Positions 12,865-40,705 of a stretch of 64,000 nt of DNA are shown here, in pieces. Positions within the stretch are counted from its first letter, which is position 1; the number at the start of each line of letters is the position of its first letter. The translations under genes were made by a program, and so were the position numbers. Below the pieces are notes generated by a model. The model saw only the letters and a list, made by a program, of their open reading frames with translations, had not been told where the DNA came from and ran no database searches. Origin of the DNA: Convolutriloba macropyga (taxonomy: Eukaryota); the NCBI RefSeq assembly GCF_964194025.1, contig NW_027449974.1, positions 1 through 64,000 on the forward strand. The letters run 5' to 3'.

Positions 12865-13053
12865 TTATAATTACCCCAAAAGAAGAAAACAGGAAATGGA
12901 GGGGAAAATGTCCGGATAATAATTTGGCTTAAACTGTGAGGGAGCTGTCCCTGCATGTAAAAGGTTGGGTTGTACTATCCAATCTCAGGAGAACCCTATC
13001 TCTTACGTGGGAGGACCCCACCCCCGATGTTCCAGTCTGTATATGTTACTACT
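12865..13053 (-). repeat. Right terminal inverted repeat of the Maverick
   Basis: Inverted copy of 1912-2145 ending in ACTACT. Confidence 0.9.
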
Positions 13054-13262
13054 CTTATTTTCTTGACTTTAATACACTTCCATTCCTGTGGATTGATAAC
13101 CCACCCTCCCTTTCTTAGCGCGCTTTTAGTTTACTGCAGAAACAGAAATAATTTTTAGTCTTAGCACTGTATTAGTCTATGCGCATTTCGCATTGCTGTT
13201 TGTTGGAATTTTTTGCTGAATATTAACACACTAAACGCGGCAATGTGCCAAACAAGAATAAT

Positions 13263-13445
13263 ATCTGATCAGATAACTTTGTGCGCTCGAGCGATCAGAT
13301 AACTTTGTGCGATCAGATCATTCACTAGATCCCAGCTCTGATCAGCTTCATGTGCGCTCGGCTCCGCCTCTTACCAGACCATCCTGCGAAGTCGCCAACA
13401 ACCTGTAACTTTGCAGAACTCGAAGTTGTGCGCTCGAGCGATTCT
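13263..13445. repeat. Cluster of GATCAGA...GTGCGCTCGA short repeats (subterminal-repeat relic)
   Basis: Same motif pair as the arrays inside the 40886-41799 element. Confidence 0.6.
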
Positions 13446-14734: not shown

Positions 14735-14810
14735 ATGTTTAACAACGCACCTGGACTTAGTGGATCGGAAAGATGGGTGACTAATTACAAAAATGACTAC
14801 CCCTATAACG
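14735..14810 (+). CDS. GST-like gene, putative coding exon 1 ([25 protein letters not shown])
   Basis: Acceptor TTTTTTCACAG at 14726, in-frame TGA just before the ATG, donor G|GTAAGA in phase 1. Confidence 0.55.
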
Positions 14811-17800: not shown

Positions 17801-20800
17801 TGCCCGAAAATGGTTAATATTTGTCGATGCACTAAGAAGTATCTGACACAAAGAAAAGAGCAAAAAATTAAAAACAATTTCACTTCGATTTTCAACCTAT
17901 TTTTTTTCTGACAAATTTTATCGAGTAAGCAGAAGAAAAAGAGGACACTTCCATAGAATTTTGTTGGAGTAAATTTCTAGAGGCAAAGAGCCTCTAAGCG
18001 ATCCAACATACATTAGTGTGGGATGGCATAAAATTTCAATAGGCCAGTTCGCTTATTATAAGCATTTCACTAATTATGAATTAAGACAACATTGACAGTG
18101 CACTAACAGAATAGAAAAAAGTGTTTTTAACTTTTCGTTACTCATTCCATTCATTGAAAACTTTTAAACAGTTCTTGCGAAGCGTTATAGTTTCAATTGA
18201 CAGCTTTCGAAAATATGATTTTTTAATTAACCCTTGTTTTGTTATTCCGTTTTCTGCGAAGTTTTTTTTGATACTATAGGTATGTTAAATCCGCGTTGCG
18301 CTCATAAAAAAATCTGCTTACATACAATTTGAGAAATAATGTTGGGAGCTTTTTGCGTCGAAATGTTTTATCACACATATCACAGAAAAATTAACAAAAT
18401 TTAAAAAATTTTGCAGGAATGTAACTAACTTTTGGTTTCATTATTGCTATCGGAAGAGGTAATCAGTGGCAGATTGTGTGAAAATTAGGATACTGAGTTG
18501 AAATAAATTGCCTCTCAGTAAAAAACAGCTTCTCATGGTAGAAGTGATAAGTATCTTTTAGGCCTTCAAAACCAATATATATAGTTCTCTTTTTTTCCTG
18601 AAAAAATTGAATAAAATTATGTAAAAATTTCTTAAAGTTACGAAAGTCAAAAAGGATTTAGAAACTAACTGGCTCCTTTTTACCTAAAAATAATGAGCAT
18701 TGATTTTGTTACGGGCATTTATATTTAACGAAACGATTGCAAGATCCCGTTCTGCAATCTGTCAGCTAATTGTACGATAAAACATTTTGCAAGGACGAAA
18801 TTAAGAAAAACCCACATTTTTGACTATTTGGCCGTCAGCATTTTTAGCCATATCTATTGTTCTCATTATGTCAATTTACTGTACTGCAGCTAATGAGTTC
18901 ACCGAAATAGCAAAACGTGGGAAATCACAATGTAGCAGTTTTTGAAATATCTGGGATAGAATAGAAAAGAATAATAACATGTTCATTCCAGGGAAAAAGT
19001 GGAAAGTTTACGAGTCATTATCTCATCAATAGCTTTTCCGTTGAAATCATAACAAAAACTGATTATAGTGACAACTCTTTGGAACTATTCAACGCTTCAA
19101 AGGAGATAATTTATCAATCATTTTATGGAAGAAAAGAAGAGTTTCACTCCTTTTTCTGAATTTTATGTAATTAGTATGTCCGTTTTCTTTTTCAAAAATG
19201 TTGCATAAATTCTAGAGGCAAAGAGCTTCTAAACAACCCAACATATACTAGTTCGAGGTTCTGCAAGAAGTTAGAAATAGTCTGAAAAAATTCATCGGGG
19301 ACAAATTTCTGATAATCCAATTCACAATTTATGAAATTGCATAAATTTCAGTGTTTTAATGTCAGTGCACAATCAAAGACGTTTGACTGTGCAAAAACAA
19401 AAAGAGAAAGATCCATGTTTTCAAATTTTCTTGACTTATTTCATTCATTCTTACAAACTTTCAAATATTTTTTCGAAGCGCTGTTTTTTCAATTGTCAGC
19501 TAGTAGAACAACATAGTAGAAGTGATCAGTATCTTTTAGGCCTTCAAAACTAAAATTTATGGTGCTGTTATTCATCCTGGAAACTTTGAATAATATGGAT
19601 TGATTTCTTAAATTTAGGAAATTCGAAGACGATGTAGACAATTAGTGGGCTCTTTTTTTACTCAAAAAGTATCAGCATTGATGTTTTAAGTGCATTCAGA
19701 TTTAGTCAATTGATTAGAAGATTCGGTTCTGCAATGTCAGTTAAATTTACTGTATAAACCCTTACTTTTCACATTTTTGTTTAAAATATCTGGAAAGGAA
19801 TAGAGAAGAGAACTTCTGCGTTCATTTCAGAGAAAAATTGGAAATTGTACAAGTTTATATCTCAATAATAGTCTATTTCAGTTGAAATTATAACTAAAAC
19901 TGATCGTAGTAACAACTCTTTTGTGCCATTCAGTGCCTCAAAAGAGATAAAATACCATGGATTTTGTAGAAAAATCACTGTATGTCCAACTAACCACTGT
20001 ACTATTGCATTATGGTGTACTAATTTATGGTTGCGCAAACACAACAGAGCTTAATCATCCTAAAGGATCACAAAACCACATAATCAGGCCAATTTTTGGA
20101 CTAAATAATTTTTATATTGTCTGCCAGATCAAAGAGAAATATACATTACTGACACCTATGGAATTGTATGTGTACAAATTGTTAAATTTGATGAGTAAGC
20201 GTTTGAGACCAAGTTTTGACTGGGGCTTCGGATAACAAACCTTCAGCGATGAAGAACTCCACGATATTCATTCTGATGATAAAATACAAAAAACCGTTAA
20301 GACCTTGAGGTTGACAACATGTCAACGAGAAATTCTCTCGTCTACCGAACAAGAAAATTTTTTAATAGTTTGCTTAATCTAGACAAAAACCTTTTAAGAG
20401 ATTTTTTGTTGTAAGCGACTCTATTCTAGCAAATTATGAATTTTTGTAAATAGCATGTGAATTTTCTTTAAGTAAAAATAATGCATAACGGAAATCTTTT
20501 TTCTCCGAACACAAAATGTAATCATCTTGTGTAAGAAAATCGTCAATTCTAGCGCCTTACTTTCAATTTATCGATCTTAGGTTTCATTCTCAAAAATTGA
20601 AATAGTCCGAAAGTGATCATTCTTGCTCAAGTCTTTCCCCGAATGACTCGCAAATTTTAAAAGCGACATGGCAAGAGCATTGATACAGCTCTGATCCATA
20701 CCTAAAATTAGACTCTATTAATTTAATCAGCGCTATATTCTGGCCAGTCCTTCCGGGCCATACTACATTTATGTCTACGTTTATGTCCCCAAAGCGTGCC

Positions 20801-23800
20801 ATGTTTTGTTGCAGATGTGCGTTTTGTGTCGCCTCGGTATCAACATCGGCCGAAAGAGGGCCAAGTGACACCCTCTCCCAAACATACAGGCAGAAGACAC
20901 TTTCCCAATAGTCAAGTCGCAAACACTTCTCTCAATTTCTCCACAGGTCTGTTCATATTTGGAAAACTTAACGACGTCAGTCTGTGACGTAAGCATTCAG
21001 TCTTTAACGTATATTAGCAAGTTTTTGCTGAATATGAGTTTTCGTATTCTGACAGACACTGGCAGACTTTTTTTCAGCGGAAATCTGACATAATTGTTCA
21101 TCCAATTTGTGGAAAACAACTGACATTATGTAAGAATTGTGATCACAATCCAGCACATTAAGCGGGTATTTACTTAAAAACATATCCGCTGAGATAAATC
21201 TGTATGTTATCTAATTTTCAGATAAAGCCACGACATGGATTGAGGTTACACTTATCTTTTATTTGTTTTTGTTCGTTTTTTTGGAATCAACCGGCTTTTG
21301 ATAAACTATTCTCAATTTAGAGGGAATGGTTGAATTAAATTCCCTAACAGTTACTCTGAACTTCATTTTTTTTCATAATAACAGGTGAGCAAATCCCAGC
21401 AGGTGTTAGTTTGAGTTCAGTACATCAAACTGATTCCCAAGTTGACAGCCAATCAGGATACGGCAGTGGAATCAATTCCCACTTCGCATCTCCTCTGACG
21501 TCACCACGGAAAATGTCCAGGCTAACAGCTCTAGTGCAGCCACCATGGGGAGTGCAGTTCAGAAATGTTAGATTTTTTTCATGTTTTCTCGAACGTTTAA
21601 TCAAAAAGTTTTTCATGTTGTTTCTCATTTAGTGAACTTGCTTAATGTTGAACTAAACCCAAACTGCAGGGTTTACCCTCTCGTGGCTTTAGTACTAATT
21701 CGCAACTTTGTTTAATTTTAACTTCGCGAATTTTGTGTTCGCGAAATAAATTTTGCTTTTAAGAATAAATTTTGTTTTTTTTTCTGCAGAATAAAATGAA
21801 ACCGCGTCCGGACAAAACAGTCCCAGACAAAACAGTTACAAATTGCAAAATATTGCCCGATGATACAGTCCTGGACAATATTTTGTTATTCGGGACTTTG
21901 TCCGGGACTGTTTTGTCTGGGACTGTTTTGTTTCTTGACGTAATCCAAAGTACCTAATGTCATAATATCCAATTTATTCCCTTTTATCATTTTGTTTAAT
22001 CATGAGATTACAAAACAATTGTAGGTAATACAAGACTGATTTATCATACCTCAGCTGATAACTTGGTTGTGGTAGTTAGAGTGCAGCCTCACGGGCTGCT
22101 GAGCTATGGCCACGGTCCGGCAGGAACGGCAAAATGACCTAGTCTTACATTGAAATATTGGTATTTATATTTTATTACATTATGAATTACGTCAATTCAA
22201 TAGGCAATATTTTGCTAAGTTGTTTTTTTATAAATTCACAAAAGGCTACGATATTGGAAACATTTTGGGTGTATAGGTACTGGGTATTTTTGTCTTGACA
22301 CCGTATATACTTTAGTCACCTATACACATCTTTAAATTACTTGTAAACTCTTGTTTTAGTCATCAGTCAAAAAGTGTTCATCTAGATCTTAGCGAGCATT
22401 TTATTTATCAGTGCCAATTTTTGTTTTTCCCTTGCTCAAAATTAAAACTGCAATAACAATTGATTAAAACGGTTCTGATTTTGTGCCCCGGAAAAACAAT
22501 GATGATATTTGTACTTTGGTTGTGGTATTTGGTTGTGGTAGTTATAAGGCAGCCTCATGGGTTGTTGAGCTAAGGCCGTGGTCCGCCATGAACAGCAAAA
22601 TGACCTAGTCTTACATTGAAATATTGGTGATAATACTTTATTACATTATAAATTATGAAACTTCAATCGGCAATTTTTTGCTCAATTGTTTTCATATAAA
22701 ATCACAAAAGGCTACGATATTGGAAACATTTTGGGTGTATAGGTAGTGGGTATTTTTGTCTTGACACCGTATAAATTTTACTCACTTATACATATCTAAA
22801 AGTTTTTGACAGTTATTTTGTATTAGTTATCCGTCAAAAAGTGTCCCTCTAGTTCCTAGCGAGCAATTTATCAACCAGTGCCAATTTTCGTATTTTTCCT
22901 CGCTCAACATTAAAATAGATTAGAATGATTCTATCTTTGTGCCCGGAAAATCAATTATGATATTTGTACTTTGGTTGTGGTAGTTATAGTGCAGCCTCAC
23001 GGGTTGTTGAGCTAAGGCCATTGTCCACCATGAAAGGCAAAATGACCTAGAATTACATTGAAATATTGTTAATTATATTTTATTACATTATAAATTACGT
23101 CAATTCAATAGGCAATATTTTGCTAATATGATTTCTTATAAATTCACAAAAGGCTACCATTATGGAAACATTTTGGGTATATACGCTTTGGGTATTTTGT
23201 CTTGACACCCTATAAACTTTATTCATTTATGCCTATCTGTAAGTTACTTGACAGTTAGCTTGTTTAGTCATCAGTCAAAAAGTGTTCTTCTAGCTATTAG
23301 CGAGCATTTTGTTTAGCAGAGCCAATTTTTGTTTTTTTTTCCCTCGCTCAACATTAAAACTGAAATAACAATTGATTAAAACGGTTCTGATTTTGTGCCC
23401 TGGAAAAACAATTATGGTACTTGTACTTTGGTTGTGGTATTTGGTTGTGGTAGTTATAAGGCAGCCTCACGGGTTGTTGAGCTAAGGCCGTGGTCCGCCC
23501 TGAACAGCAAAGTGACCTACTCTTACATTGAAATATTGGTGATAATACTTTATTTCATTATAAATTATGACACTTCAATTGGCAATTTTTTGCTCAATTG
23601 TTTTCATATGAATTCACAAAAGGCTACAATATTGGAAGCATTTTGGTTATATAGGTAGTGGGTATTTTTGTCTTGACGCCGTATAAACTTTAGTCACCTA
23701 TACACATCTTTAAATTTCTTGTAAATTCTTGTTTTAGTCATCAGTCAAAAAGTGTTCTTCTAGATCTTAGCGAGCATTTTATTTATCAGTGCCAATTTTT

Positions 23801-26800
23801 GTTTTTCCCTTGCTCAAAATTAAAACTGAAGTAACACTTGATTAGATTGGTTCTAATTTTGTGCCCCGAAAAAACAATTATGCTTAAAAAGATTTGGAAA
23901 GCCAATGAGAGATGACGCAGTAAAGCAAAGCCTTACTGAATTCCGAGTCAAGTCAACGAGTATACAACTGATATTAATCGTGCAGTGTAAATATTTACAA
24001 ATTACATATTTTTGACACTCAACAAAAAAATTAAATAAATCGAAATTTTTTCGGAAATTTTAAAGAAGAACGCGTGAAGTTCATACGTTTTTATACGTCA
24101 AACCGACAACAGAAAGTCGATATCATTTCCCCAAATTCAATGTCAACCTATACATATTGTTAGTCCATTCCCATATGATGTCTGCTGAGTAGGTATAATG
24201 ACTCAATACCGGGGCTTTTAAGACGCTCTCAATAGATTTTGTGGAATAGAATTTCTAATTGCATAAATTGTTTCTATTCTTTCGGCCATTTTTCGTAGGA
24301 TATAAATTAACCTTTAAACCTTAAAAGCTGTCTATGTGAACCCATAAATATTTTTAAATAGTTATCTGTTCATTGAAGTCCTTTTTTGATCTTACCGAAT
24401 TTAAAGCTATCCATTATATAAGAGCTAAACTACCCATAACATTCTGTTTGAATTATTAAAAAGTAAAAGTAAAACAAATCGATTATACAGGGTCACTCTA
24501 TCGTGGGAAAAGGAAACAACAAATCCTCTTGTGTTTCTTTCGGTAGGTAGTTCCGATCACAATGTACCAGAGCAGTAGTCGCCCATCGTGTGCAGCAGTG
24601 GGCATGCTGGCAAGACTACTGGGACTGAGGATGAACTACGTAGAGGTCAACACCATCGCTGTAGGTCACACTTTAACCTCTGCTCAGGAAATTCTCGAAC
24701 CACTTTAACTCTTAATCGGATCTAGCAGCTTAGTGGCTTCAAAATTTTCTCAACACACAGGCGCAAACAGGGAGTGTCTAATTGAAGCAAGGCCTAATTT
24801 CGTTCAATATGGCCTGGAAAATTGCCGTAATGAAGCGATTACAATGAGCCTGGTCAAATTTACAAATTTGGGTGGTCATGAAACCAGCTGTCGTGTGTTT
24901 TGCTGCGAAAATTTTTACGAATTTCTCTCTTTACATGACCAATTTTTCAGGGCGAGTAATTTTTGATAAAAATGAAGTTTTTTTTACCGAAATTAGTTCT
25001 TGTTCAAAATGAGATTTGTATCCCAAGGATGAAATTATGCCCGCGTTTTGAACTCTTTTTTGATCACCATTTCAACTCCAATTCGAGCGTTATGTTTCAT
25101 TTACGAGAGACAGAACAGATAATAGTGAAACATTGCGCGGTGGATCTAGAAGAGGCTGCTGAAAATCTTGAATAGACTCTTTCCTCAATATTTCATCACT
25201 TCGCATTTTTTTCAGCGTTATATCAACAGTTTCTATCACTTTTTCTAGTACTAATGGATGCCTAAGTGTTCATTTAACTCGGTTACAGACCGTGCAACGT
25301 TTTTACGTAGCTCCAAAAAAAAATAATTGGTCCAATTGAATTAGTGTTCAAATTTTACCAAGAACGTTTTGTAATAGCGCTGAAGCAAATGCGAGGATTG
25401 TTTTTAATCAGTGCTGAAAAAATTGTTAGAAGAGTTGAAAAGTTCTGAATAACTTACGGTAAATGCACTGCTATTGCGATAAAAAAAATAACTGCGATAA
25501 AAAAAATGCTGAAAGTACTGAATAAGAATTGACAAAATTGGGAAAAGCAGAAAATAATTTAGGCTCTGAGTTTAAGGCATCTAAAAAGATGTTATAAAAA
25601 CACCTTTGGCGCAAAAGAGGAAGAGACAGTCACGACACCACCATAGTGATGAGTGCATTTAAAACTTGCAAGAATCTTGCAAGCTGATTCAAAACTTTGC
25701 AATAGTCTTGCAAGAATCCTGCAAGATGTCAGTCCGGGCAGAAAATAAATCAGGGCACTATTGTTTTAGAAAGCACCTTTGAAGCAAATTTTTGTTCAAT
25801 AAACAAATTACAAAGGTGAAACCCATGGAAAAATGTTTAGTCCTGATTCAAAATCTTGCAGAACTCTTGCAAGTTTTTCAATTCTGGAAAATTTTTCTGA
25901 GTATTTTTGGAAGCCAAAACTAACTGAAAACCAAACGAATTGCTTTTTACAAAAATTTGGAATATCATAACTGATTCTAATTGATTTTTTTCTGAAGTAC
26001 TTCTCGAATGTGGAGTCTGTTTTAAAAGAATTCTAGTTTCCAACAAACAACTAGAAACATCTTAAACCACACCAAATTATCTGTTTTAAATGCAGTTGAT
26101 CAAATAAACGACGAAAACAACCACTTTTAAATTTTTTCTTTGATTTTTTTAATCAAAAGAATTGTTTATAGAGAAATCATTAGTCGGAATTTTTTTATTT
26201 CTGATATTATCGGTATTTGAGGTTGCTTTTGCAGTCGTAAAATTTATTCTGATCAAGGTTTGGTCTAATTGTCTTCTTATTGAGTTGCCAGTGAACCAAT
26301 TTGATGCCTTCATTTGATAGCTATTTGTGTTAATGGCCTTGAAGTTGTTTCAATCAAAAATTATTTTGCAAGTGAATAAAAAAAACTACCAGTACCAAGC
26401 AAAAATCTTGGTACTGGTATGCATTCACTGGCAAAATTGCATTGCAAGATTCCTGCACGTTTTTTGATTCCTCGATCACTAGGGTAGAGCCCGGTCGAAG
26501 ATCTAAAAAGGTTACTGAAAAATTCTCGGGATTTGCTAAATTAGCGTTTACAAATTAGTGAGATTGTTAAACTGAGATCGAAAACTTTACCAGAAGAACT
26601 GAATTAATAAAAAAAACAGAAAATTAAGCGCAAAGTTTCAGGAAAAATCGCGTATAAAGTTAGTGATTAAGTGGAAAGATTTCGCTTTTCAACGCTACTT
26701 ATGAGTTTTTCCACGCAAAAATTCAGAAAAACTTTCTGCCCCGGCAGAAAACCTTTTCAAAATAACACAAATTGAGGATGCCAGCTTTTTTGAATTTTCC

Positions 26801-29800
26801 TTTGAGTACACTGACGATCGGTGTTTTGTCGCTGAAAGTAATAGTAATCATATTTATACGAAAACAGTATAACAAAAAAATTAATTTTTTTGACAAAACA
26901 GAAAAAAAGACAATTGAGAAAACATATACTCAGAAAAAAGTTTTTCCATTTCTTTTCCTCAAAAATGATGATAAATTTCGTTTTATTTTTCTCTACCAAG
27001 ATAACCGATTTATTAAGTTGAAAGCTGTCTATGAGGACGGAAAGTTTAAGTTTTTCAGTTTTATATGGAATAAATTACTTTCGAATAATGCAACAGTCTT
27101 CGACAGTAATTTCTTCGGAGCATTTAGGAAAGATACCATTGGAAGACAATCTGCCCTAATTGAAACCTGAGGTCAAGTTTGCAAAAACTTGCAATTTGTT
27201 TTACATACTCTGTGAAATAATGTATTATATTCGCAAATATTTGCAAACAAGTGTTGCAAATTTGACATTGGTTTTGCAAATTTTTGAAAACTGTCACACT
27301 ACTTTACAAACAATTTTATAACGCTAACATTAATTTGCAACAAATTTGAGATTATCACATTAACTTACTTTTTTTTCAAATTTGACCTCGGATTTTTTAA
27401 TCGAAAATTGCCTCAAAAAATCAGTTAAGTTAGGTTAAGTTGTCTTTTAAAGTAAAATTACCTTAACTTTATTTAGTATGTTCTGAAATATCACCGGGTG
27501 CTTCAGTGGGTTGTTTTGATGTTTTCTTTACGAATTTGAAACTATTTGCAATTTTTGCCTTGGTTTGCAAAATTTGCAAATTTGACCTTCAGCTGTGAAA
27601 GTTTACAAATTTTTGCAAATTTGACTTTGATCCGGAATAATTTGAACAAATTTGCAAATTTGACCTTACGTTTGGACTAGGGTGGGCATGCATTTCGAAT
27701 TCTGGTGACATCAATAATTACACAGTGTCGCCCCATTTTTTGCTATAGAATTTTTTTGTGAACTTTATTTCCAATCAGAGAATTTTTTTTGTCTTTTGCC
27801 TTTATTGTTTTTTGATGCTTGATTTGGTTAATTTTGAAATTTTCGTGAAAAATTAGCACGGGTTGACTCAACGAGTTAGTTTTTTCCATGAACTGATATG
27901 AATAACAGAAAAAATTATTGCAAAAAAGGAGCATAAGAAAGCATTTTTCTCTCCATAATGACAGAAAAGTATAGAGTGAGGTTAATTACAATCAAGTTTC
28001 TCTGCAATAGTTGACAGTGCGGGAATCAGTTTGGCCAACTGCTAATTTCCATTCCGTTTTCCTGTTAATTAATGTTAGCTTCCGAGTTACCTCTAAATTT
28101 ATTTTTATCGAATGGAGCAGAGAAGAAAAAACTTCATTTTATGTTCTTTAACTATTCAAACAATGCGTGAAAAATCGGTTTCTACCTGTTGTTAAGTAAA
28201 ACAACCTATTTTTCGTCGACTACTAAAAATAATCACGTTAACGTTTCAAAAGCTATCGAAATGAAATTCTACAAAACCTAATGAAGTACAAATTAAATCA
28301 GTTTTACACAATTGCACAAAACATTGATTTATTCGATAGTTTATTATTCACTTAGCAATAATGATATATATACTTTTTTTAAACCAAAAGCGTTCAAATT
28401 TGGCATATAAAAGAGCTGGTGATATGACGTTTGCGGTTACGTACACAACAGAAGACCAACACGATAGTTGGCAAAAAATTCAAAATGAAATGTCCAGTTT
28501 GAAAATAAATATTGTTAAGACATAGAAAAATCGGAATAAATGTTTTTTTTCTGCAAAAATGGGGGAACATTGAGAAACGTGGAAATGGTAGACGATAAAT
28601 TAAAATTTGTGCACTTTTTAGAATTAATTTAAAAAAAAGTCTCAAATACTTTTGAGAATAGTCCAAGCGTAACCCAATATCGCCTCAGAATAAGGCAACC
28701 AATTAGAAGTGACTCGATTCTGTGAGGTTTCGAAAAATATCGGCGAAGCGTTATCGCAACATTAATTTCCGGATCGATAACGCACTTCATAAAAATTTTC
28801 CTCGATAAGGATGAAAAAAATTTACCACAAATCCTACTTAAATACCTCCTTATCCAACAATTTTAGTTTTTAGGAGCTTTTTATTGTAAAACACAACATT
28901 TACATCAATCGGTAAAAGACAAGATCAGCCAAAATAGGCCGAAGAAAATTATTCGGACTGGATTTAAATTCATTACCCCCTTTTCATGGCTGGTTGGAGC
29001 AAAACTAAATACAAGAAATCCAGTTTTAGGCCGTTGAAGATGAGTTAAATACGCTTAAAAAATGAAGATGAGTTAAATACGCTTTGGAACGCATTGGGAC
29101 TCTATATTATGGATTGCAGTTCGCTTAAAAAACCCGAGTAAATGCTCATTTCTGGGAGGACAAAATCAGCAGAGGATGATCCGAGGTGAGTTTGAGTTAT
29201 AACCAATTTAACTTATTTAGGGTGAAGAAAAATCGGAAAAGTTTCGTCAGCAAGTTAATCCGGCTGGAACCATTCCTGTGATAAACGACGAAGGATTCAA
29301 ACTGTTTGAATACAGAGCCATACTGAGATACTTAGTCTCCAAATATGGGTACAAAAATAACCCACTCTACCCTGACGATCTTACCACAAGGTTAGATTAT
29401 GTGTCATCAAAGTGCATATTTTGAAAAGCATGAACTTGAATTTGCAATCAAGTTGCAAAAATTCGGTTAACATGAAACATATATTTTCCGAAAACACAAT
29501 CTCGTAATCTTAGTTAAAACCTAAGGTCAAGATTGCAAAAGTTGGCAAAAGGATTTACAAATTTTGTAAAATAACGTATTATATTGTCAAATATTTGCAA
29601 ACAAGTTTTCCAAATTTGACATTAATTGGAATTTTTTTTCAAATTCTCTCTTTAATTTTCAATCAACATTTTTTTCAAACTTTGACATTAATTTGCAACT
29701 AATTTAAAACTCTCAAATTATTTTACAATTTTTTTTACAAAATTGACCACGGGTTTTTTAATCAAAAACTCATTCAAAATCTCCTTCTAATGACCTCTTC

Positions 29801-32800
29801 ACTTTAAAAAAACACAAAATTTTTTGGACATTTAGAAAATTTTGAAAAAATAGTATTTTTAATAAGCATTGCGAAAATACTAATCTGAGACGTCCAGAAA
29901 GCGGTCTTTCCATTTTTTTTCTATTTCCAATTTTTCGTGTGGTTTTTGGAATTTTTCATAAATTTTAAACTCTTTTCCTTGAAACTCTTTCTGAAGTCGT
30001 AACATTTGCCGAAAGTTGAATGCTTGCAGCTGACATCCAAAGGTGGTGTCCTTGTCTAGCAGGCATCTAGTCGAATTGGCTGTAACAATTAACAAAACTA
30101 AAAATCGGTTCAAAAAAGCACAAAAAACTGGGCACGGTGTGCTAAAAACAATTTGTCCTAAAAAAGGGTGTAACGGCTGCTCTCCTTGTGTTTCACAAAG
30201 AAAGTTTTACACCGCCCAGTTCGTTCTGAGTGGTTACAAAAATCTGTCCGGATACTTCGTTGATGCACTTTGCTTTTGTAGCTGTATATCCGCTCTGCTG
30301 TACTTACCGTTGCATTAACTAATTTGACTAACTTAGTTTTGGATTTTTTCTCAATTGAACTGGGTCCACAGATCACACAATACGGGATCTCTTTATGTTT
30401 ACCAGTCCAATCGTTTTGATGAAACAAATCTAAGGCAAAAATATATGCCTAAGAAGTGTTATGAAAATTGGTTTCTAACATAATCCTAGGTGTGTGAGTG
30501 TGTGTGTGTTGCGATTTTCGCAGAGTACTCACGAGTTGAAGATGGGAAATCGGGACACAGAAAATTGAATTCACTGCTCGAGACGTTTTCGATACAAGAC
30601 ACAATATTTGATAGAATATTGCTCAAGGCCAATTTTTGTTATCAAGACACAGGATAAATTTAACAAATATACTGCTCAAGGGTTTCGTTTTAGCAAGACA
30701 CAGTAACAAATATACTGCTCAAGACTATATTATTTCAACAATTTTAATGCTGAGTTTATTTGCTAGTTCGAGTTGCTAGGCTGACAAGATATTGAGTTTT
30801 TTAGTTCTTATTTTTGTTCAGCTTGTTAACAATTTTTGTGCTGACGTGGCATACGTGGCTGTTTCTGATTTGCTATACACAGTTTCCTCGCTAAGGGGAT
30901 GGATAATCGGGATAAAAATAGAACACAGTAATAGTTTTCGTCCAACGCAATTTTGTCATTCCTTAAGCTCAACTCCAACATCGCCGGCCCTGTTTTCCTT
31001 CTTGAAAACATCATCGTCAGTTGGTAGTACTGGAGCGAGCTTCACTACGGGCCTCTTGTAGTATCCATCTTTTGTTCGGATTTTTGCTGATCGAATCACT
31101 CCGTCGAACCCTTCAAACGTTTCGGTTATTTGACCCAGATTGTAATATCCACGTTTGTCACTGTCTTCCATTTACCACACAAGATAACCCTGCTGAAGAC
31201 TTCTGTCTGTTGTGGTCTGCCATTTCTTTCGACTATTCAACGTTGGCAAGTACTCTTTACGGAATCTGTCCCAGATGAGGTCTGCGTAAGCTTGTGTTTG
31301 TCGGAAGAGCTTTCTATGATCAACAAATTGCTCTGCACCTGATAGATACGGTAAACAAAGGTTCTTGTTGCCCAGTAGAAAATGGTTTAGAGTAATAGCT
31401 TCTAAATCGGTAGCATCAGAACTGACTTGTGTCAGCGGTCTAGCATTCAGCGTCTGTTCAACAAGACACATCGTGGTTGACAGATCATCCTCCGTGACTG
31501 ATCGATTACACAGCACTGCATACATTGCCTTCTTGCAACTCCTAACCAGTCTTTCCCACACTCCTCCAAAGTGTGGTGCTGCAGGTGGGTTGAACTTCCA
31601 TCTGATTCCTTGTTGAATCAGATGTTCTTCAATTCGCGCCTTGTTCCATGCTGCTATATACTCTGCCAATTCTTTCTCAGCTCCAACGAAGTTCGTCCCG
31701 TTATCACTAATGATTTTGACCGGTTTGCCTCTTCGAGCAATGAATCTCATAATTGCGTTCAGACATCTATCAGTGTCTAGTTTTGGTACAATCTCTATAT
31801 GTACCGCACGTACAGTAAGGCATGTGAATAGACAGCACCAACGCTTTTCGTTTCTTCGACCAATCTTTACTGTGAATGGTCTGAAATAGTCTACGCCCAC
31901 ATTCGAAAATACTGTTGATGCGACTAATCGTTCTTCAGGTAGATCTGCCATTACTGGTGCCTTTGTTTGGGCTCTTCCCTTTCGACATCTAATGCATTTG
32001 TTTTTGACCGATCTCAAAGCATTTCGTATGCCTAGGATCCAGAATTTCTGCTGAACTAAGTTTCTGACATGTTCAGTACCTTCGTGATGATTATTCTTAT
32101 GTTCTTTTTGCAAGAATAATTCAACTACATGGTTCTTCCAATGTAACAATATTGGATGCTTGGTTTCGAAGTTCAATTGACTTTTTACCTATTCTGCCCT
32201 GGGCACGAATAAGTCCTGGCTGGTCAATGAATGGTGAAAACTGGAGGATTTTGCTGTTTTTTGGAATTTCCTTTTCAGCCTTGAGAGATTTCATCTCTTC
32301 AGCAAACTGTTCTCGCTGCAGTAGTCTGAAGATGCTTGCTTGTGCATCCTCTCCTTCTTCAACACTTAGTTTTTTTGTTACCAGTTTGTGTTTTATAAAT
32401 ACGCGCTGTACGCATGCCATTGTATTTACTAGTCGATTGAAACTGCTATATCGGTCCCACTGAATCATCGGCTTCTTCTCTTCAACCTTTGCCGAGAAGA
32501 CCATTTCGTCGTTTTGTTCGTCTGAAGCAAATGTTGAATTCAACTGTGAGGCCATTCGTTCTCTCGTTGCTTCAACCAGGCCGGCCCAGTGAGCCATTCG
32601 CTTCTCTTAAGTTCGTCAATATTGATCGCTCGTGTCCCGATGTCAGCTGGATTGTTAACACCACTCACATGATTCCACTGTGAAACATTAGTTTTATCCA
32701 AAATCTCAGCCACTCTGTTTGCAACAAACACCTGTTGCTTAGGGTGGGAGCTATGAATCCATTGCAGAACAGTAGTGGAGTCTGTCCAAAAATTACAACT

Positions 32801-35800
32801 GTGAATCTTCGATTCGTGTTCCTTCACTATCTGTTCTTTAAGTCACCACTGCTGCTTGTAGTTCCAAGCGTGGTATGGAAAGGTGTCGCATCGGTGCGAC
32901 TCGGCATTTTCCGATTACAAATGCTAAGTCTGCTGAGTATTCTTTGGGCTTTGAACGTAGGTATGCCACAGCGCACATTGTGTCTTCAGATGCGTCGGCC
33001 AACACATGAAGTTCCCATTTGTCCTTGGCTGTGCTGAAGTATCTTCTATCAATGCTGGTTTCTGCTACTTCTGGAAGCTGCGCCTTCCACTTCAGAAACT
33101 CTTCTTCTGCGTTAGGTTCTACTGAGTTGTCCCAATGTTGTCCATTTTTGGTCCAGATAATCTTCAGGAGTCGTCTCATATGAACACTGAATGGTGCAAA
33201 CAGTCCAAGAGGATCAAACACTGAAGAAACTAGAGATAAGATCTTCCTTTGGGTGATTGGGTTCTCAACTTTTTTGCTCGTACCTCTACAAACCTGTAGA
33301 CTATCATCGGTAATCGTCCACTGAAGCCCAAGCACCGATGACCCTTCCTGGCTGGGTTCTACTTCAACATGCTTTGTTTTGCTGATTGATCTTAAGTCCT
33401 CTGGGATTGCGTTGGTTACCACATCGCTGTTGGTGATCCACGTCTTCAGTTCAAATCCATGTTTTGAGAGAAGAGGTTGCAGTTGTTTGAAAACCTTGAT
33501 TGCTTCTTCAGGTGTTTCAACTGACTTGATGAAATCGTCCATGTAGAAGTTGTTTTGGACTGTTTTTGCTGCAATTGGGAACTCGTCCTCGTTATCGATC
33601 GCTACTCGCTTCAGAGCATAGTTGGCACATGTTGGTGAACTCTTGGCTCCGAAAACACGACGCTGATACTCGTAAATTTGCACAGGTTCGTTCATTGTTG
33701 GTCGCCACAGGAATCTCAAGCAGCTTTTATCCCGATCAGGAACTTGCACTTGAAGAAACATTGATTCAATATCTGCGGTTAAGGCAATTGGTCCTCCTCA
33801 AAATCTGAATATTGTTCCGATCAACCCGTGTAGCAGATCGGGTCCGGCTAGCAACTTGTCATTTAGGCATACATCCTTGTATTTTGCTGCAGCGTTGCAA
33901 ACACGGCGAACTTTACCCGGTTTGTTGGGGTTTAGTACTGGATGGTGGGGCAAATATCATTCCTTTCCGAAAGTGCCTTTGACTTCTGATTTGCCAAGGA
34001 TCTTCACAAATCCCTTTTCAACATCTGTATCAATTGACTGTTGATACAATTCTTTTAACTTTGGGTCTCGTTGGAATCTTCGTTCCAGTGAGTAGAGCTG
34101 ACCAAGGGCTGAGCTGTAATTGTTCGGAAGATTGGGTTCTGGTTCATTCCAGAGCATGCCCACTTCGTACCGCCCCCTGTAAACTTCGTTGTGCTCTCTA
34201 GAAACTTCTGAGCTTGTTGCTCTTTCTTTGATTGACTTAGAACATTTATTTTGGAAGCATAAGTTTCTTTGTCCCACCATGATTGGATATTTTCTGCCAC
34301 TTTCACATCTTCTGTGAAGGCGAAATGACAAACATTTTGACTTTTCTTGCCTTTCATGGGACAACTGACTACCCATCCTAATTCTGTTAAGACGGCGAAA
34401 AGCTCACTTCGTGTTCCAATCTTATAGTCCAATAGACGTTGAATTTCGTAGGCATCTTTTCCAAGTATGATGCCTACTTCCATCAGGTTGAATGTTCTGT
34501 TAGTGAGAACATTCAGGTGTCTGAAGCTGTTCTTCAGTTCCTTTTAGTCATATGTCGTGTTTCCCAACGAGATTGATGGGTGTGCAAACGCTTCGATCGA
34601 ATGCACCTTTGAATGTTGTCCTTTATTGTGATAGGAACCTTCTCGGTCCTCAAATCTTGCGTCCCATGTATACCAGCTATGTTCAAGGTAACGTCCGTGC
34701 CATTGGCTTGTAGTTGATCCTTGACACTTTGATCGATGAATGATACTGTTGACCCACTATCGAGGAAAGCGTAGGTAGTCAACCTGTTACCACCTTTCTG
34801 AACCGATACCGGAACGATTTGAAGAAAACTAGTAACTTGGTTACTCTGGTTGATTGTTGCCGCGCTTACATTAACTACGTGACTACCCTCGTCCATTTGG
34901 TTTTCTGAGTGTAGCAGTCTGTTGTGTTTTTTGTTACATCCATTTATACTGCACGGGTGGACTTTACAATCTTTGATTGCATGCCCTTTCCCCAGACATC
35001 CATAACATAAGCGTTCTTTTCTCACTGCTGCATAGCGATCGGTGACATAATCTTGAATATTGGACAGTTCCATATTTTAAGAGTGCCATCCGCTAGTGGA
35101 CAGTGGTTGTTTTGCGTCTGCTTGGTTTCTTGCAGGTTTGAACTTGCACTGAAGTTCGATGTCTTCGAGAATCGTTTTTCTCTATTTGTGTTGCGTCGGT
35201 CTTCTTCTTTGTGTTCCCCTTTAAACGATGAAAACCCTTCATGCACGAATGCCATTCGTGATAGCCATTTTTCAAATATGATTAGATCAGGCCAGTCCTC
35301 GTCTTTGTCATCGACGTAGAACCACCATTTTTCTTTAAGAACTTGAGGCAGCTTATCAACTGCCATGTACAATGTCGAACTTGATTGCAAATCACCAATA
35401 TGTTTGTACTCTTTGAGCAAGTTCACGAAGTTAGATACAATAACAGAAAAATTAATCAGGCTGGTTGAATCACGAGTTTTCACTTGATTAGCTTTTCGTA
35501 GGCTCTCGAGCTGCGCATCTATAATTACATGCGGTCTTCCAAATTTTCTTTCTAAAATGTTCCAGGCAGCACTATAAAACTGTCCAGAATAGCCCATTCC
35601 CGAGATTGCAGATTTTGCTTTGCCTGATAGCAGAGTCTTCAAATGACTCATTTTATCTGAGTCGGGAATCATGCGTTTATCTACTGTTGCTATGAACATG
35701 CTAGACCACTCAGGCCACTCCAGCGGGTTTCCGTCAAAATTTTTCAACCTCAATTTTGGTAAACTACTGCTTGAATGTCCAGTGTTGTAGTGCCTTCCAG

Positions 35801-38800: not shown

Positions 38801-40705
38801 TTAACTTTAATTTTTGCGTATCTTGAAGAAGTACTGGGTCCTGCAATGTGATGTATTAATGTTCATTACGAATGTGCAACTATTTGCATTATTAGCCTTG
38901 GTTTGCAAAAATTTGCAAATTTGACATAAATCGGGAAAAATTTGCAAATATTTGCAAATTTGACATAATGTTTGGACTAGGTAACATGATAATCTCGTAA
39001 TTGAAACGGAGCATCAGAGAGGATAGACTAACAGGAATAAACAATTTCTGGATCTTTTCCGTTTGTGCCCCCCGCGCAGTTGGCGCATGTTATTTGCACC
39101 CCCCCCCCCCCCGACGCACGTGCCATATTTTTTACAATGATTTACTATGCAATGGCACGTGCTCTATAACGGGGGGGGGGGGGGGGCATAACGTACTGGG
39201 GGACACAAACGGAAAAGCTCCTAATTTCTTTAGTTGGAGTCCTTTTTCTTGTCCCCAAAATCTAAACGTGCTAACTTCTGCGGAGACACATATATTGATT
39301 ATTTCCATGAAAAATCTAAGCCTCAAATAGTGAGCCAACTATATCTAGTTCAAATAGTGAACAAATCAATCGACTTGCTGTGCAAATCTTCAACGTGACC
39401 TTTCCGGAAAGGACTGGAAAATGAAGCAAGGATTGGGGTAAATTGTGAAGCAAATTGATAGTTTTCACCGTAAAGCATCGACACAATTTGAATGTGTTTC
39501 GGAGAGAATGAAAAGTTTTCAGAGGTTAAATTCTATTTTTGACCGCACTGCTCGTAAAACCTACGCAACATTTTTTAAACCTTCCGCGAATTACAATAAC
39601 TGTTTGCTCTTACCAATGACCCGCAGATTGGTGCGATGTAGAATCGTAGAACTATACACCTAAAAATATACATCAGAATCTAGAATTTCCCGTACTATCC
39701 TCACAGAGGATTCGCATTCTGTTTTTTGGCCTGACCCTATCTACGAGCATGTCATACATTTTAAATATTATACATTAGGAGCTTTGCCACTTCTAATATT
39801 TGACGTTTTCTGTGACGTAATTGCTTGTTAATTGTTCTACAGAGCCCGAATTGATGCATGGCTCGATTACGACATCTGTACTCTAAGCCCTGCTGTAGAT
39901 GAGTTTGTGGCACCATCTCTCATCAGAAATCATCAACAATCATTCAATTCCGATCAGCAACAGCACCCAAACGACGCAGCCGAGGAGCGACTGAAGAAAT
40001 TAGAAGTAATTAATTTTTACTATGATAGTATTTGCCATATAGATTTAAGTTCAGAGTATCATACCACAAGTTGGTTTATAAAAAAAAGTTGCTCGACGGT
40101 GATAATTTTGCTTTTGTGGCCGGTGTAGGTACCAAATTGTGAATAAATTTACTCATTTTAAAAGCCCCAACTTTATTTTTTAAATCCGGATTCCAGTTAA
40201 TCTTGCGGTTATATAATTTTTCTGTACGTAAAAACATTTCGGTACCAAAATTGACTTGTAATGCAATGGTTATTCGACTTTGCTCTAAAATATTTTTTGC
40301 AGCCTAACAAGAAAATGGAATGGCCATGGGCAGTTTATAATTTCAAATTATAAATTACTATGACTATTGTAATGTTCACACACTTATAATGGTAAATATA
40401 AGTTATATTTACCATTATAAGGGTGTAAAAATATGAATTATAGAGGAACCCAATATTTTTGGTCGATTTAGGCAGCCCTTGACACAGTCAACGCCCATGT
40501 TCAAGTTTCAACCTACCTTTGTGGCTCCCATCTCACTCTAGCTGACCTAAGTGTTGTAGCATCGCTGGCTATTCTCGACTCAACTAAGTTCAACTTCGGA
40601 CCAAATCGTGCGTCGTTGACCAATTGGATGCTGAGGATGAAGGGCTTGCGACAGTTTCAAGACAGTTTTGGAGCATTCTATGCGATTATGGGAACTCTTA
40701 AATAA
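14735..40705 (+). CDS. GST: Glutathione S-transferase-like protein (delta/theta-type fold) with N-terminal extension; join(14735..14810,20815..20946,21385..21566,24547..24660,29221..29390,39843..40005,40472..40705), ~356 aa
   Basis: All junctions are GT-AG and phase-compatible (1,1,0,0,2,0); total 1071 nt with no internal stop. GST motifs: [43 protein letters not shown]. Exons 4-7 are firm; exons 1-3 are inferred from splice sites and phase. Confidence 0.85.
17930..19950. repeat. Old degenerate tandem duplication (two copies ~1-1.2 kb apart)
   Basis: TTCTAGAGGCAAAGAGC at ~17977 and ~19210; GTAGAAGTGATxAGTATCTTTTAGGCCTTCAAAAC at ~18538 and ~19516. Confidence 0.75.
19957..20420 (+). mobile_element. 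Non-LTR retrotransposon (LINE, CR1/L2-like) 3' fragment
   Basis: [39 protein letters not shown] resembles the post-RT C-terminal region of LINE ORF2. Confidence 0.65.
20815..20946 (+). CDS. GST-like gene, putative exon 2 (basic, Pro/Ser-rich)
   Basis: TTTTGTTGCAG acceptor, ACAG|GTCTGT donor, phase 1-1, open frame, GC-rich relative to flanks. Confidence 0.6.
21385..21566 (+). CDS. GST-like gene, exon 3 (Ser-rich linker)
   Basis: Poly-T..ATAACAG acceptor, AAT|GTTAGA donor in phase 0, matching exon 4. Confidence 0.7.
21803..21940. mobile_element. Small foldback/MITE built from 15-bp GACAAAACAGTCCCA units
   Basis: Left units GGACAAAACAGTCCCAGACAAAACAG are mirrored by CTGTTTTGTCTGGGACTGTTTTG on the right. 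Confidence 0.75.
22061..23882. repeat. Tandem array of four ~455-bp units in GST intron 3
   Basis: Units start near 22061, 22513, 22968 and 23426 (TTGGTTGTGGTAGTTA..GCAGCCTCA..). Confidence 0.95.
24547..24660 (+). CDS. GST-like gene, exon 4 (start of thioredoxin-like N domain)
   Basis: [38 protein letters not shown] aligns without gaps to the start of delta-class GSTs; donor GTAGGT. Confidence 0.88.
25641..26484. mobile_element. Non-autonomous TIR DNA transposon (CMC/EnSpm-like) with CTTGCAAG subterminal repeats
   Basis: CCATAGTGAT..AAAACTTGCAAGAATCTTGCAA matches the inverted right end ..TTGCAAGATTCCTGCACGTTTT..ATCACTAGGG; flanks CA/TA. Confidence 0.7.
27154..27682. mobile_element. MITE, CMC/EnSpm-like, with TTTGCAAA subterminal repeats
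   Basis: CCCTAATTGAAACCTGAGGTCAAGTTTGCAAA / TTTGCAAATTTGACCTTACGTTTGGACTAGGG TIRs; 2-bp TSD TG/TG. Confidence 0.85.
29221..29390 (+). CDS. GST-like gene, exon 5 (G-site region)
   Basis: [56 protein letters not shown]; TTATTTAG acceptor, AG|GTTAGA donor. Confidence 0.93.
30457..30980 (-). repeat. 3' LTR of BEL/Pao element
   Basis: 30530-30980 is closely similar to 36965-37415. Begins TGTTGGAG on the minus strand after the purine-rich GAAGGAAAACAGGGCCGGCGA. Confidence 0.9.
30956..36830 (-). pseudogene. BEL/Pao gag-pol polyprotein (DUF1759 gag, CCHC knuckles, aspartic protease, RT, RNase H, integrase), broken by stops and frameshifts
   Basis: [16 protein letters not shown] (gag), [80 protein letters not shown]. 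Confidence 0.95.
36931..36947 (-). promoter_or_regulatory. Primer-binding site (TGGTCCGCCGACCTGGA), probably tRNA-Tyr type
   Basis: 2 nt downstream of the 5' LTR; starts with TGG, complementary to tRNA CCA. Confidence 0.75.
36950..37415 (-). repeat. 5' LTR of BEL/Pao element (466 bp, TG...CA)
   Basis: TGTTGGAG...GTTACA on the minus strand, followed by the PBS; internal ~50-bp TGCTCAAG..CAAGACAC repeats. Confidence 0.93.
39050..39221. mobile_element. 172-bp palindromic MITE with GG termini and 8-bp TSD
   Basis: GGATCTTTTCCGTTTGTG / CACAAACGGAAAAGCTCC TIRs; flanks CAATTTCT / TAATTTCT; internal poly-C and poly-G arms. Confidence 0.85.
39843..40005 (+). CDS. GST-like gene, exon 6 (C domain, helices 4-5)
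   Basis: (R)[24 protein letters not shown]...EERLKKLE; TTCTACAG acceptor completes AG|A = Arg; donor GTAATT. Confidence 0.9.
40472..40705 (+). CDS. GST-like gene, terminal exon 7
   Basis: [35 protein letters not shown]...[10 protein letters not shown]...LK*, containing the GST N-capping box (TxxD). Confidence 0.92.
   Translation, partial: AALDTVNAHVQVSTYLCGSHLTLADLSVVASLAILDSTKFNFGPNRASLTNWMLRMKGLRQFQDSFGAFYAIMGTLK

What the first reader, a model, noticed from the sequence alone, without database searches (positions are those of the whole stretch)
24547..29390. GST with a rewired glutathione site: candidate pseudo-enzyme
Seen versus delta/theta-class consensus, by ungapped manual alignment: the catalytic S-x-P-C-R segment reads R-P-S-C-A, so the catalytic Ser position is Arg and the conserved Arg is Ala. 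GEH reads GEE, and the glutathione-binding ES(R/N)AI motif reads EYRAI. The structural cis-Pro (TIP), LYP linker and TxAD capping box are intact, and the frame is open across seven exons. Inference: the fold is maintained but GSH conjugation is probably lost or altered, as in S-crystallin or other non-catalytic GST-fold proteins.
Basis: partly seen in the sequence, partly recalled or inferred. Interest (0 to 1): 0.7.

Follow-up and report, generated by a model that had tools for sequence, protein, structure and literature searches.

The report
Acoel GST-like gene, degenerate glutathione site
This is a real, conserved gene of the acoel worm Convolutriloba macropyga that keeps the glutathione-transferase fold, has lost four of the seven residues that normally hold and activate glutathione, and carries a floppy 131-residue head, so it is probably a repurposed, non-classical member of a very common enzyme family.

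Summary

- **Gene.** The window is positions 1-64000 of an 87-kb unplaced contig of the Convolutriloba macropyga (acoel) assembly. The gene has seven GT-AG coding exons (14735-40705) and encodes a 356-aa protein, annotated at NCBI as "glutathione S-transferase 1-1-like".
- **Glutathione site.** Against delta-class enzymes, the catalytic Ser is Arg142, GEH is GEE, and ESRAI is EYRAI. The cis-Pro, LYP and TLAD motifs are intact.
- **Extension.** Residues 1-131 are a predicted disordered extension with no known relatives.
- **Orthologue.** Only one close relative turned up, an intronless (mRNA-like) contig from another sequencing run. It shares NPAG and has EFRAI, but keeps the catalytic Ser and NEH.
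- **Selection and fold.** The glutathione-binding domain is the best conserved part (80% identity, dN/dS about 0.09, dS saturated). The model is confident (pLDDT 91) and closest to insect delta GSTs.
- **DNA check.** DNA contigs from two samples confirm the Arg and Tyr codons.

Best reading: a functional GST-fold protein that no longer performs classical Ser-dependent conjugation. Activity and transcription in this species were not testable. Interest is modest: a new variant of a known kind.

The parts
14735..14810 (+). Coding exon 1 (start codon; residues 1-25 of the N-terminal extension, with the conserved S-G-S..W.T-N-Y-K-N-D-Y motif)
   Evidence: tblastn of P0015 100%; unique GT-AG solution; motif shared with P0001
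20815..20946 (+). Coding exon 2 (extension; conserved D-V-R-F.S-P-R-Y-Q and T-G-R-R-H-F-P)
21385..21566 (+). Coding exon 3 (extension; conserved S-P-L.S-P-R and Q-P-P-W-G.Q-F-R-N just before the GST domain)
24547..24660 (+). Coding exon 4: strand beta1 and helix alpha1 of the GST domain. It holds R-P-S-C-A (24580-24594), with Arg142 (CGC, 24580-24582) at the catalytic-Ser position.
   Evidence: DNA confirmed in 4 runs
29221..29390 (+). Coding exon 5: the rest of the thioredoxin-like domain. G-E-E 29221-29229; N-P-A-G-T-I-P 29257-29277 (cis-Pro187); E-Y-R-A-I 29308-29322 (Tyr199 TAC 29311-29313); L-Y-P 29365-29373.
   Evidence: Pfam GST_N; PDB alignments; DNA confirmed
39843..40005 (+). Coding exon 6: helix alpha4 and a lineage-specific Q/N-rich insertion (low-confidence loop in the model)
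40472..40705 (+). Coding exon 7: C-terminal helices, T-L-A-D capping box (40535-40546), stop codon
   Evidence: Pfam GST_C; all sampled words of 39800-40900 held by 4 DNA runs

Best explanation
The locus is a functional, lineage-restricted GST-fold gene of the acoel Convolutriloba macropyga.

Its 356-residue product has two parts. Residues 1-131 form an intrinsically disordered, Ser/Pro-rich N-terminal tail with a few short conserved motifs. Residues 132-356 form a complete cytosolic-GST domain, closest in sequence and predicted structure to the insect delta and epsilon classes.

The glutathione site is degenerate:
- The Ser that activates the thiol is Arg142.
- The His of GEH is Glu171.
- The His that binds the glycine carboxylate is Gly184.
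- The Ser of the E-S motif, which binds the gamma-glutamyl carboxylate, is Tyr199.
- The backbone contact next to the cis-Pro, Glu198 and Arg200 remain.

Most likely mechanism (inferred): the protein no longer carries out classical Ser-dependent glutathione conjugation, and binds glutathione weakly or not at all. Its strongly conserved thioredoxin-like domain is kept as a binding surface for another ligand or partner, and the disordered tail provides docking or regulation.

The change appears to have come in two steps. His-to-Gly and Ser-to-aromatic are shared with the only known orthologue, so they are older. Ser-to-Arg (one base, AGC to CGC) and His-to-Glu are specific to C. macropyga.
For: - **Gene model (shown).** Seven GT-AG exons reproduce P0015 exactly.
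- **Source (shown).** The contig is CAXMKX030000863.1 of GCA_964194025.3, labelled Convolutriloba macropyga.
- **Family (shown).** Pfam GST_N 4.7e-9 and GST_C 2.8e-8. The best solved relatives are delta GSTs at 2e-29, against about 1e-12 for theta.
- **Register (shown).** Arg142 aligns with the catalytic Ser in HMMER and MAFFT alignments and is the helix N-cap in the model.
- **Fold (shown).** The model has pLDDT 91.3, and the top fold matches are all delta GSTs, TM 0.85/0.91.
- **Tail (shown).** Residues 1-118 have pLDDT below 50. There is no Pfam or PDB hit, and the only relative of the tail is P0001.
- **Orthologue (shown).** P0001 has S-S-S-S-P-S-S-A, N-E-H, N-P-A-G and E-F-R-A-I.
- **Selection (shown).** GST_N is 80% identical with dN 0.16, dS 1.7 or more, ratio about 0.09. 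Identity is 60% in GST_C and 47% in the tail.
- **Tree (shown).** The pair sits on a long stem (1.23) with short tips (0.23, 0.18).
- **DNA (shown).** The exon 4 and 5 letters are confirmed in two samples.
- **From the literature.**
  - Ser65 OG and N contact the glutamyl carboxylate, and Ser65/Arg66 belong to the electron-sharing network (PMC4660579, PMC7691559).
  - Replacing the glycyl-binding His in a delta GST lowered catalytic efficiency about 5200-fold (PMC4660579).
- **Small sample.** In 17 GST domains fetched here, the E-S position is Ser in 15, Ala in 2 and never aromatic.
Against: - No activity, binding or expression data exist for this protein.
- No RNA run of this species was served.
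- The orthologue keeps the catalytic Ser and the GEH His, so the ancestral protein may still have been an enzyme.
- Glu198, Arg200, the cis-Pro and Asp of the R-D pair are kept. That is more than pure fold maintenance would need, and could mean that some glutathione-like ligand still binds.
- I could not inspect side-chain geometry in the model.
- dS is saturated and there are only two sequences, so selection cannot be assigned to one lineage.
Confidence: 0.55

Rival explanations
1. It is still an active glutathione transferase or peroxidase with an unusual site. Arg142 could stabilise the thiolate electrostatically, or Ser141 could reach it after a local loop shift. The Tyr199 hydroxyl or the residue 199 backbone NH could replace the Ser contact.
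For: - Glu198, Arg200, the cis-Pro and the Asp partner are conserved.
- The site region is nearly invariant between the two species, as expected if a small-molecule pocket is still in use.
- A run of three Ser precedes Arg142.
- The orthologue keeps a canonical Ser and His.
Against: - Four of the seven contacts are changed.
- Loss of the glycyl-binding His alone cost about 5200-fold in a delta GST (PMC4660579).
- The orthologue has Phe, not Tyr, at the E-S position, so a hydroxyl is not what is conserved there.
- The model's register puts Arg, not Ser141, at the N-cap.
Confidence: 0.25
2. The gene is functional in the sister species but is drifting toward a pseudogene in C. macropyga. The Ser-to-Arg and His-to-Glu changes and the Q/N-rich insertion would be early signs of relaxed constraint.
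For: - The two most damaging changes (Arg142, Glu171) and the longer alpha4-alpha5 insertion are specific to C. macropyga.
- A roughly 6.9-kb LTR retroelement sits in intron 5 and makes that intron 10.4 kb.
- No RNA evidence was available for this species.
Against: - All seven exons are open, with consensus GT-AG sites and no frameshift.
- The tip branch of P0015 (0.23) is about as short as that of P0001 (0.18).
- GST_N is 80% identical at saturated synonymous divergence.
Confidence: 0.12
3. The contig is not acoel DNA. It would come from an arthropod (food or contaminant) or from an arthropod-to-acoel transfer, which would explain why the nearest characterised GSTs are insect delta enzymes.
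For: - The contig is a small unplaced piece (87 kb) of the assembly.
- The best solved and best named relatives are insect delta GSTs.
- Delta GSTs are described as insect-specific (PMC9318439 summary).
Against: - Identity to any arthropod GST is only 26-37%, far below within-class values.
- The single-copy depth of about 50-75 is even across the region in both samples.
- The tree does not place the pair inside any arthropod group.
- The organism of the only orthologue is unknown to me, so this reading is not fully excluded.
Confidence: 0.05

Closest known systems
Insect delta-class glutathione transferases (e.g. AmGSTD1 7RHP, BmGSTD 3VK9, DmGSTD1 3MAK, AdGSTD3-3 1JLV)
   Same: - Same two-domain fold; these are the best sequence matches (2e-29) and best fold matches (TM 0.85/0.91).
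- Same register of beta1, alpha1, cis-Pro, LYP linker and TxAD capping box.
- Glu64, Arg66 and Asp100 equivalents are kept.
   Different: - Only 26-37% identity.
- The host is an acoel, not an arthropod.
- Catalytic Ser is Arg, His38 is Glu, His50 is Gly, Ser65 is Tyr.
- It has a 131-residue disordered N-terminal extension and an extra loop between alpha4 and alpha5.
Yeast Ure2p (GST-fold nitrogen regulator with a disordered N-terminal prion domain)
   Same: - Same architecture: a disordered N-terminal extension followed by a complete GST fold.
- The usual catalytic residue is absent and the role is regulatory. This analogy rests on my own knowledge plus PMC3227518.
   Different: - Independent origin and a different GST class.
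- The Ure2p tail is Gln/Asn-rich, whereas this one is Ser/Pro-rich.
- Ure2p keeps its Glu180-Ser181 glutathione contacts (PMC3227518); this protein has lost that Ser.
Cephalopod S-crystallins
   Same: GST-fold proteins that have lost most enzyme activity while the fold is maintained (my own knowledge).
   Different: - S-crystallins derive from sigma-class (Tyr-type) GSTs.
- They are a large, highly expressed lens family.
- They have no disordered N-terminal tail.
- Nothing here indicates a bulk structural role.
Degenerate or truncated members of insect GST families (e.g. annotated forms lacking the catalytic Ser region)
   Same: Members of large GST families that lack the catalytic Ser are documented and are suspected to be inactive (PMC4195677).
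   Different: Those are recent paralogues or annotation variants inside a class. This one is an old, separately conserved lineage with its own extension.

Membership tests
Cytosolic (soluble) GST superfamily | Thioredoxin-like N-terminal domain plus all-helical C-terminal domain (Pfam GST_N + GST_C) | tested here: met
   GST_N 36.9 bits (cut-off 20.9) and GST_C 34.4 bits (cut-off 20.7). AF2 model pLDDT 91.3 with beta-alpha-beta-alpha-beta-beta-alpha plus helices. Fold matches TM 0.85/0.91.
Cytosolic (soluble) GST superfamily | Structural landmarks: cis-Pro before beta3, LYP linker, N-capping box S/TxxD in alpha6 | tested here: met
   P187, L217-Y218-P219, and T301, A303 and D304 of the T-L-A-D box are invariant columns in the 16-sequence alignment.
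Delta class GST | Sequence identity of roughly 40% or more to class members (conventional class rule, my own knowledge) | tested here: not met
   26-37% identity to the nearest GSTs; 25-29% in structural alignments.
Delta class GST | Arthropod/insect distribution | tested here: not met
   The record is labelled Convolutriloba macropyga, Acoela. The tree leaves the pair unplaced on a long stem.
Catalytically competent Ser-type GST (delta/epsilon/theta) | Ser at the N-cap of helix alpha1 that activates the glutathione thiol | tested here: not met
   Arg142 holds this position in the HMMER and MAFFT alignments and in the model. The orthologue P0001 does have Ser.
Catalytically competent Ser-type GST (delta/epsilon/theta) | His binding the glycyl carboxylate (N-P-x-H before the cis-Pro) | tested here: not met
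   N-P-A-G in both P0015 and P0001. Role of the His from PMC4660579.
Catalytically competent Ser-type GST (delta/epsilon/theta) | E-S pair at the start of helix alpha3 binding the gamma-glutamyl group | tested here: not met
   Glu198 is kept, but Ser is Tyr199 (Phe in P0001). Role of the Ser from PMC4660579 and PMC7691559.
Catalytically competent Ser-type GST (delta/epsilon/theta) | Measured glutathione binding and conjugating activity | not testable with these tools
   Needs recombinant protein and assays.
Non-catalytic GST-fold proteins (Ure2p-like architecture) | Disordered N-terminal extension in front of an intact GST fold that lacks the catalytic residue | tested here: met
   Residues 1-118 have pLDDT below 50, while the GST domain scores 93-98. 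Arg is at the catalytic position. This is an analogy of architecture only; no homology of the tails was found.
Processed or decayed pseudogene | Frameshifts, stops, lost splice sites, or neutral evolution | tested here: not met
   Open frame, seven GT-AG introns, dN/dS about 0.08-0.09 over the GST domain.

The most novel reading that the evidence does not exclude
An acoel-restricted adaptor built from a GST fold. The former glutathione pocket is almost invariant between the two species despite saturated synonymous divergence. It would have been repurposed to bind a non-glutathione ligand or a peptide, possibly a motif of the protein's own conserved, Ser/Pro-rich disordered tail, giving a phospho-regulated switch. 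A side implication is that delta-like GSTs are older than arthropods.
Probability: 0.15. Interest if true: 0.5.

Novelty: new variant of a known kind. Interest (0 to 1): 0.3.

Why it matters
GST-fold proteins that have given up catalysis for binding or regulation are a recurring theme; Ure2p, eEF1B-gamma, CLICs and crystallins are examples.

This one adds an animal case from an early-branching bilaterian lineage. The loss can be ordered in two steps by comparing two species, and a new disordered tail has been added.

It is a clean, testable example of enzyme-to-pseudoenzyme evolution. It is also a caution for automated annotation, because the public record calls it an ordinary "glutathione S-transferase 1-1-like". 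It does not open a long-standing question.

Tried and rejected
1. **One-residue-gap alignment.** I first suspected that a gapped alignment (S-R-P = S-x-P) would put Ser141 at the catalytic position. I rejected this: HMMER, MAFFT and the model's secondary structure all keep the ungapped register.
2. **Insect genome.** I first took the window for a dipteran genome with a four-exon gene starting at the internal Met136. I rejected this: the orthologue has Leu there, and three upstream exons are conserved.
3. **RNA evidence.** No RNA run is served for this stretch. The four holders are DNA contigs from one study, so transcription and splice junctions in this species remain untested. RNA data do exist according to PMC12849515.
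5. **Relatives of the tail.** No Pfam hit, no PDB hit, and no relative other than P0001.
6. **Alternative canonical exons.** A search for alternative exons or tandem GST copies in the window found none.
7. **Organism of run SRR19329409.** Not found in the paper library.
8. **Class placement by tree.** Unresolved, because only 16 sequences were available.
9. **Side-chain geometry or docking.** Not possible, because model coordinates are not exposed.
Full report
**What is there**

- Reading the frames gave four GST-like exons. An exhaustive profile search with the last exon then found one strong relative, P0001 (339 aa, 66% identity over that exon, E 6e-25). Nothing else was close among 1.84 billion representatives.
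- P0001 has about 125 extra residues before the GST domain. tblastn showed that the window encodes matching pieces upstream, at about 14.7, 20.8 and 21.4 kb.
- A word search with P0001 returned P0015 (356 aa), named at NCBI 'glutathione S-transferase 1-1-like [Convolutriloba macropyga]'. P0015 matches the window at 100% in seven blocks.
- A brute-force search over GT/AG sites found exactly one exon set that reproduces P0015: 14735-14810, 20815-20946, 21385-21566, 24547-24660, 29221-29390, 39843-40005 and 40472-40705.
- The record is contig CAXMKX030000863.1 (86,986 bp, unplaced) of assembly GCA_964194025.3, and window coordinates equal contig coordinates.
- The species is an acoel. Its genome note describes a 1.18-Gb assembly with 88% in 15 chromosomes (PMC13650328 abstract).

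So 'seven exons, open frame' is right, but the finding's coordinates cover only exons 4 and 5.

**Checking the motif claims**

| Canonical delta motif | This protein | Window coordinates |
|---|---|---|
| catalytic S-x-P-C-R | Arg142-Pro-Ser-Cys-Ala146 | 24580-24594 |
| G-E-H | Gly169-Glu-Glu171 | 29221-29229 |
| T-I-P (cis-Pro) | Thr185-Ile-Pro187 | 29269-29277 |
| E-S-R-A-I | Glu198-Tyr-Arg-Ala-Ile202 (Tyr codon TAC 29311-29313) | 29308-29322 |
| L-Y-P | Leu217-Tyr-Pro219 | 29365-29373 |
| T-x-A-D | Thr301-Leu-Ala-Asp304 | 40535-40546 |

My first suspicion was that a one-residue gap would align Ser141-Arg-Pro with the canonical S-x-P and rescue the catalytic Ser. The tools say otherwise.

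- HMMER aligns the protein to honeybee AmGSTD1 and other delta structures without a gap through this region. P-I..Y-Q matches before the motif and C-x-A-V after it. Arg142 then sits opposite the catalytic Ser, and Pro143 opposite the first Pro of S-P-P-C-R.
- MAFFT with 14 other GSTs gives the same columns.
- In both AlphaFold2 models, strand beta1 is residues 134-138 and helix alpha1 begins at Pro143. Arg142 is therefore the helix N-cap, which is the place of the catalytic Ser in delta enzymes.

The N-P-Q-H segment before the cis-Pro reads N-P-A-G, so the His that binds the glycine carboxylate of glutathione is Gly184.

**Roles of these residues, from papers**

- The equivalent of Ser65 contacts the glutamyl carboxylate with its side-chain oxygen and backbone nitrogen. 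With Arg66 it belongs to the electron-sharing network described for AdGSTD3-3, and Glu64 pairs with the glutamyl amino group (PMC4660579 and PMC7691559).
- Replacing the glycyl-binding His in a delta GST lowered catalytic efficiency about 5200-fold (PMC4660579).

Seven residues are usually listed for delta enzymes: Ser9, His38, His50, the backbone at Ile52, Glu64, Ser65 and Arg66 (that list is from my own knowledge). Of these, C. macropyga keeps three and has replaced four.

**Is the sequence right?**

Four public DNA runs (two samples, one study, possibly the source of the assembly) hold the region at an even depth of about 50-75 (about 7 in the fourth run). Their contigs show no differing letter in exon 4 or exon 5; all differences are intronic. 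The same runs hold all sampled words of 39800-40900, which covers exons 6 and 7. The Tyr and Arg codons are not assembly slips.

**Is it a live gene?**

- No RNA run was served for this species, although RNA data exist (PMC12849515). Transcription here is therefore untested.
- The orthologue P0001 comes from a 1331-base Logan contig of run SRR19329409. That contig carries the whole 339-codon frame without introns, plus untranslated ends, so it looks like an mRNA. I could not learn which organism that run is from.
- Codon comparison of the two genes:

| Region | Amino-acid identity | dN | dS | dN/dS |
|---|---|---|---|---|
| GST N-terminal domain | 80% | 0.16 | 1.7 | about 0.09 |
| C-terminal domain | 60% | 0.32 | saturated | not computable |
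| N-terminal tail | 47% | 0.53 | saturated | not computable |
| Whole GST domain | 67% | 0.26 | 3.3 | about 0.08 |

- Synonymous differences are at or beyond saturation (pS 0.68-0.79), so these ratios are rough.
- Purifying selection is plain, and it is strongest on the very domain whose glutathione contacts have changed.
- A maximum-likelihood tree puts the two proteins together (100/100) on a long stem (1.23) with short tips (0.23 and 0.18). It does not resolve their place among the other GSTs.
- There is no tandem copy and no alternative canonical exon in the window.

**What the orthologue says about history**

P0001 reads S-S-S-S-P-S-S-A, N-E-H, N-P-A-G and E-F-R-A-I.

- His-to-Gly and Ser-to-aromatic are shared, so they are old.
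- The catalytic Ser and the GEH His are still present in P0001. Their loss in C. macropyga is lineage-specific. Ser to Arg takes one base (AGC to CGC); His to Glu takes two.
- Because the partner has Phe, the hydroxyl of Tyr199 is not the conserved feature at that position.

**The N-terminal tail**

- Residues 1-131 have no Pfam hit and no match among solved structures, even at E 10.
- Among proteins of 196-623 residues, the only relative is P0001.
- The tail is predicted disordered, with pLDDT below 50 for residues 1-118.
- Short islands are conserved: W.T-N-Y-K-N-D-Y, D-V-R-F.S-P-R-Y-Q, T-G-R-R-H-F-P, S-P-L.S-P-R and Q-P-P-W-G.Q-F-R-N-V-V-P-I-T.
- Several of these islands are Ser/Thr-Pro sites. 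That they are docking or phosphorylation motifs is my inference only.
- The internal Met136, which I first took for the start, is Leu in P0001, so it is not a conserved start.

**Fold**

The GST domain model is confident (pLDDT 91.3, pTM 0.88). The only weak stretch is the lineage-specific Q/N-rich insertion between helices alpha4 and alpha5. The best fold matches are all insect delta GSTs, followed by epsilon. This mirrors the sequence ranking: delta 2e-29, epsilon about 1e-19, plant phi about 1e-16, theta about 1e-12.

**Interpretation**

- The gene is real, conserved and encodes an intact GST fold.
- Its glutathione site lacks the residues needed for classical catalysis in this species, and was already impaired in the common ancestor of the two species.
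- The best-supported reading is a GST-fold protein that has left classical conjugation and is retained for another role that depends on the thioredoxin-like domain. Binding of another ligand or a partner is most likely, with the tail supplying docking or regulation.
- What is shown: the anatomy, the register, the conservation pattern and the fold.
- What is inferred: loss of glutathione binding and activity, and any role of the tail.
- Rivals:
  - an unusual but active enzyme (about 0.25)
  - early decay in C. macropyga only (about 0.12)
  - non-acoel origin of this small unplaced contig (about 0.05)
- The last rival is not fully excluded, because the nearest characterised relatives are insect enzymes and I could not identify the organism of the orthologue. 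Against it, identity to any arthropod GST is only 26-37% and read depth is even.

**Comparison with the known**

- It works most like the non-catalytic GST-fold proteins.
- The closest in architecture is yeast Ure2p (disordered N-terminal domain plus a GST fold without the usual catalytic residue). That is analogy, not homology, and Ure2p keeps its Glu-Ser contacts (PMC3227518).
- It is a member of the cytosolic GST superfamily.
- It does not meet the tests for the delta class: identity is below the usual threshold and the host is not an arthropod.
- It does not meet the tests for a catalytically competent Ser-type GST.
- The S-crystallin comparison is only a loose analogy.

**Limits**

- All three word searches and the single exhaustive search were used.
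- Model coordinates cannot be inspected.

**Verdict**

This is a new variant of a known kind, of modest interest.

Noticed in passing
window 30500-37420 (minus strand), inside intron 5 of the GST-like gene: An LTR retroelement of about 6.9 kb. Its direct terminal repeats lie at about 30528-30980 and 36961-37415, are 93-97% alike and start about 6434 bases apart. The pol-like reading frames on the minus strand appear broken into several pieces. GC rises to 0.42-0.44 here against about 0.33 around it. The element makes intron 5 10.4 kb long.
   Followed up: partly
window 25597-25940 and 27136-27820 (intron 4): Short repeats rich in 'ttgcaa' words reach summed contig depths of about 2,000-20,000, against about 50-75 for the flanks. 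They are very high-copy dispersed or MITE-like families of this genome. Similar 'ttgcaaa' blocks recur at 29430-29760 and 38800-39000.
   Followed up: no
window about 48090 to beyond 50705 (minus strand): The next called gene downstream encodes a 528-residue product with RING-finger Pfam hits (zf-C3HC4, zf-RING_2 and relatives), according to the gene table of the public record.
   Followed up: no
window 1912-13053: An earlier first-stage note of this scan describes a deletion-derived Maverick/Polinton element just upstream of exon 1 of the GST-like gene. I did not examine it.
   Followed up: no
P0002, P0003, P0005, P0007 (hits): Several long proteins (642 to 5511 residues) in public data carry 5-8 GST-C-like stretches each. 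They are either tandem multi-GST fusions or run-together gene models. Their origin is unknown.
   Followed up: no
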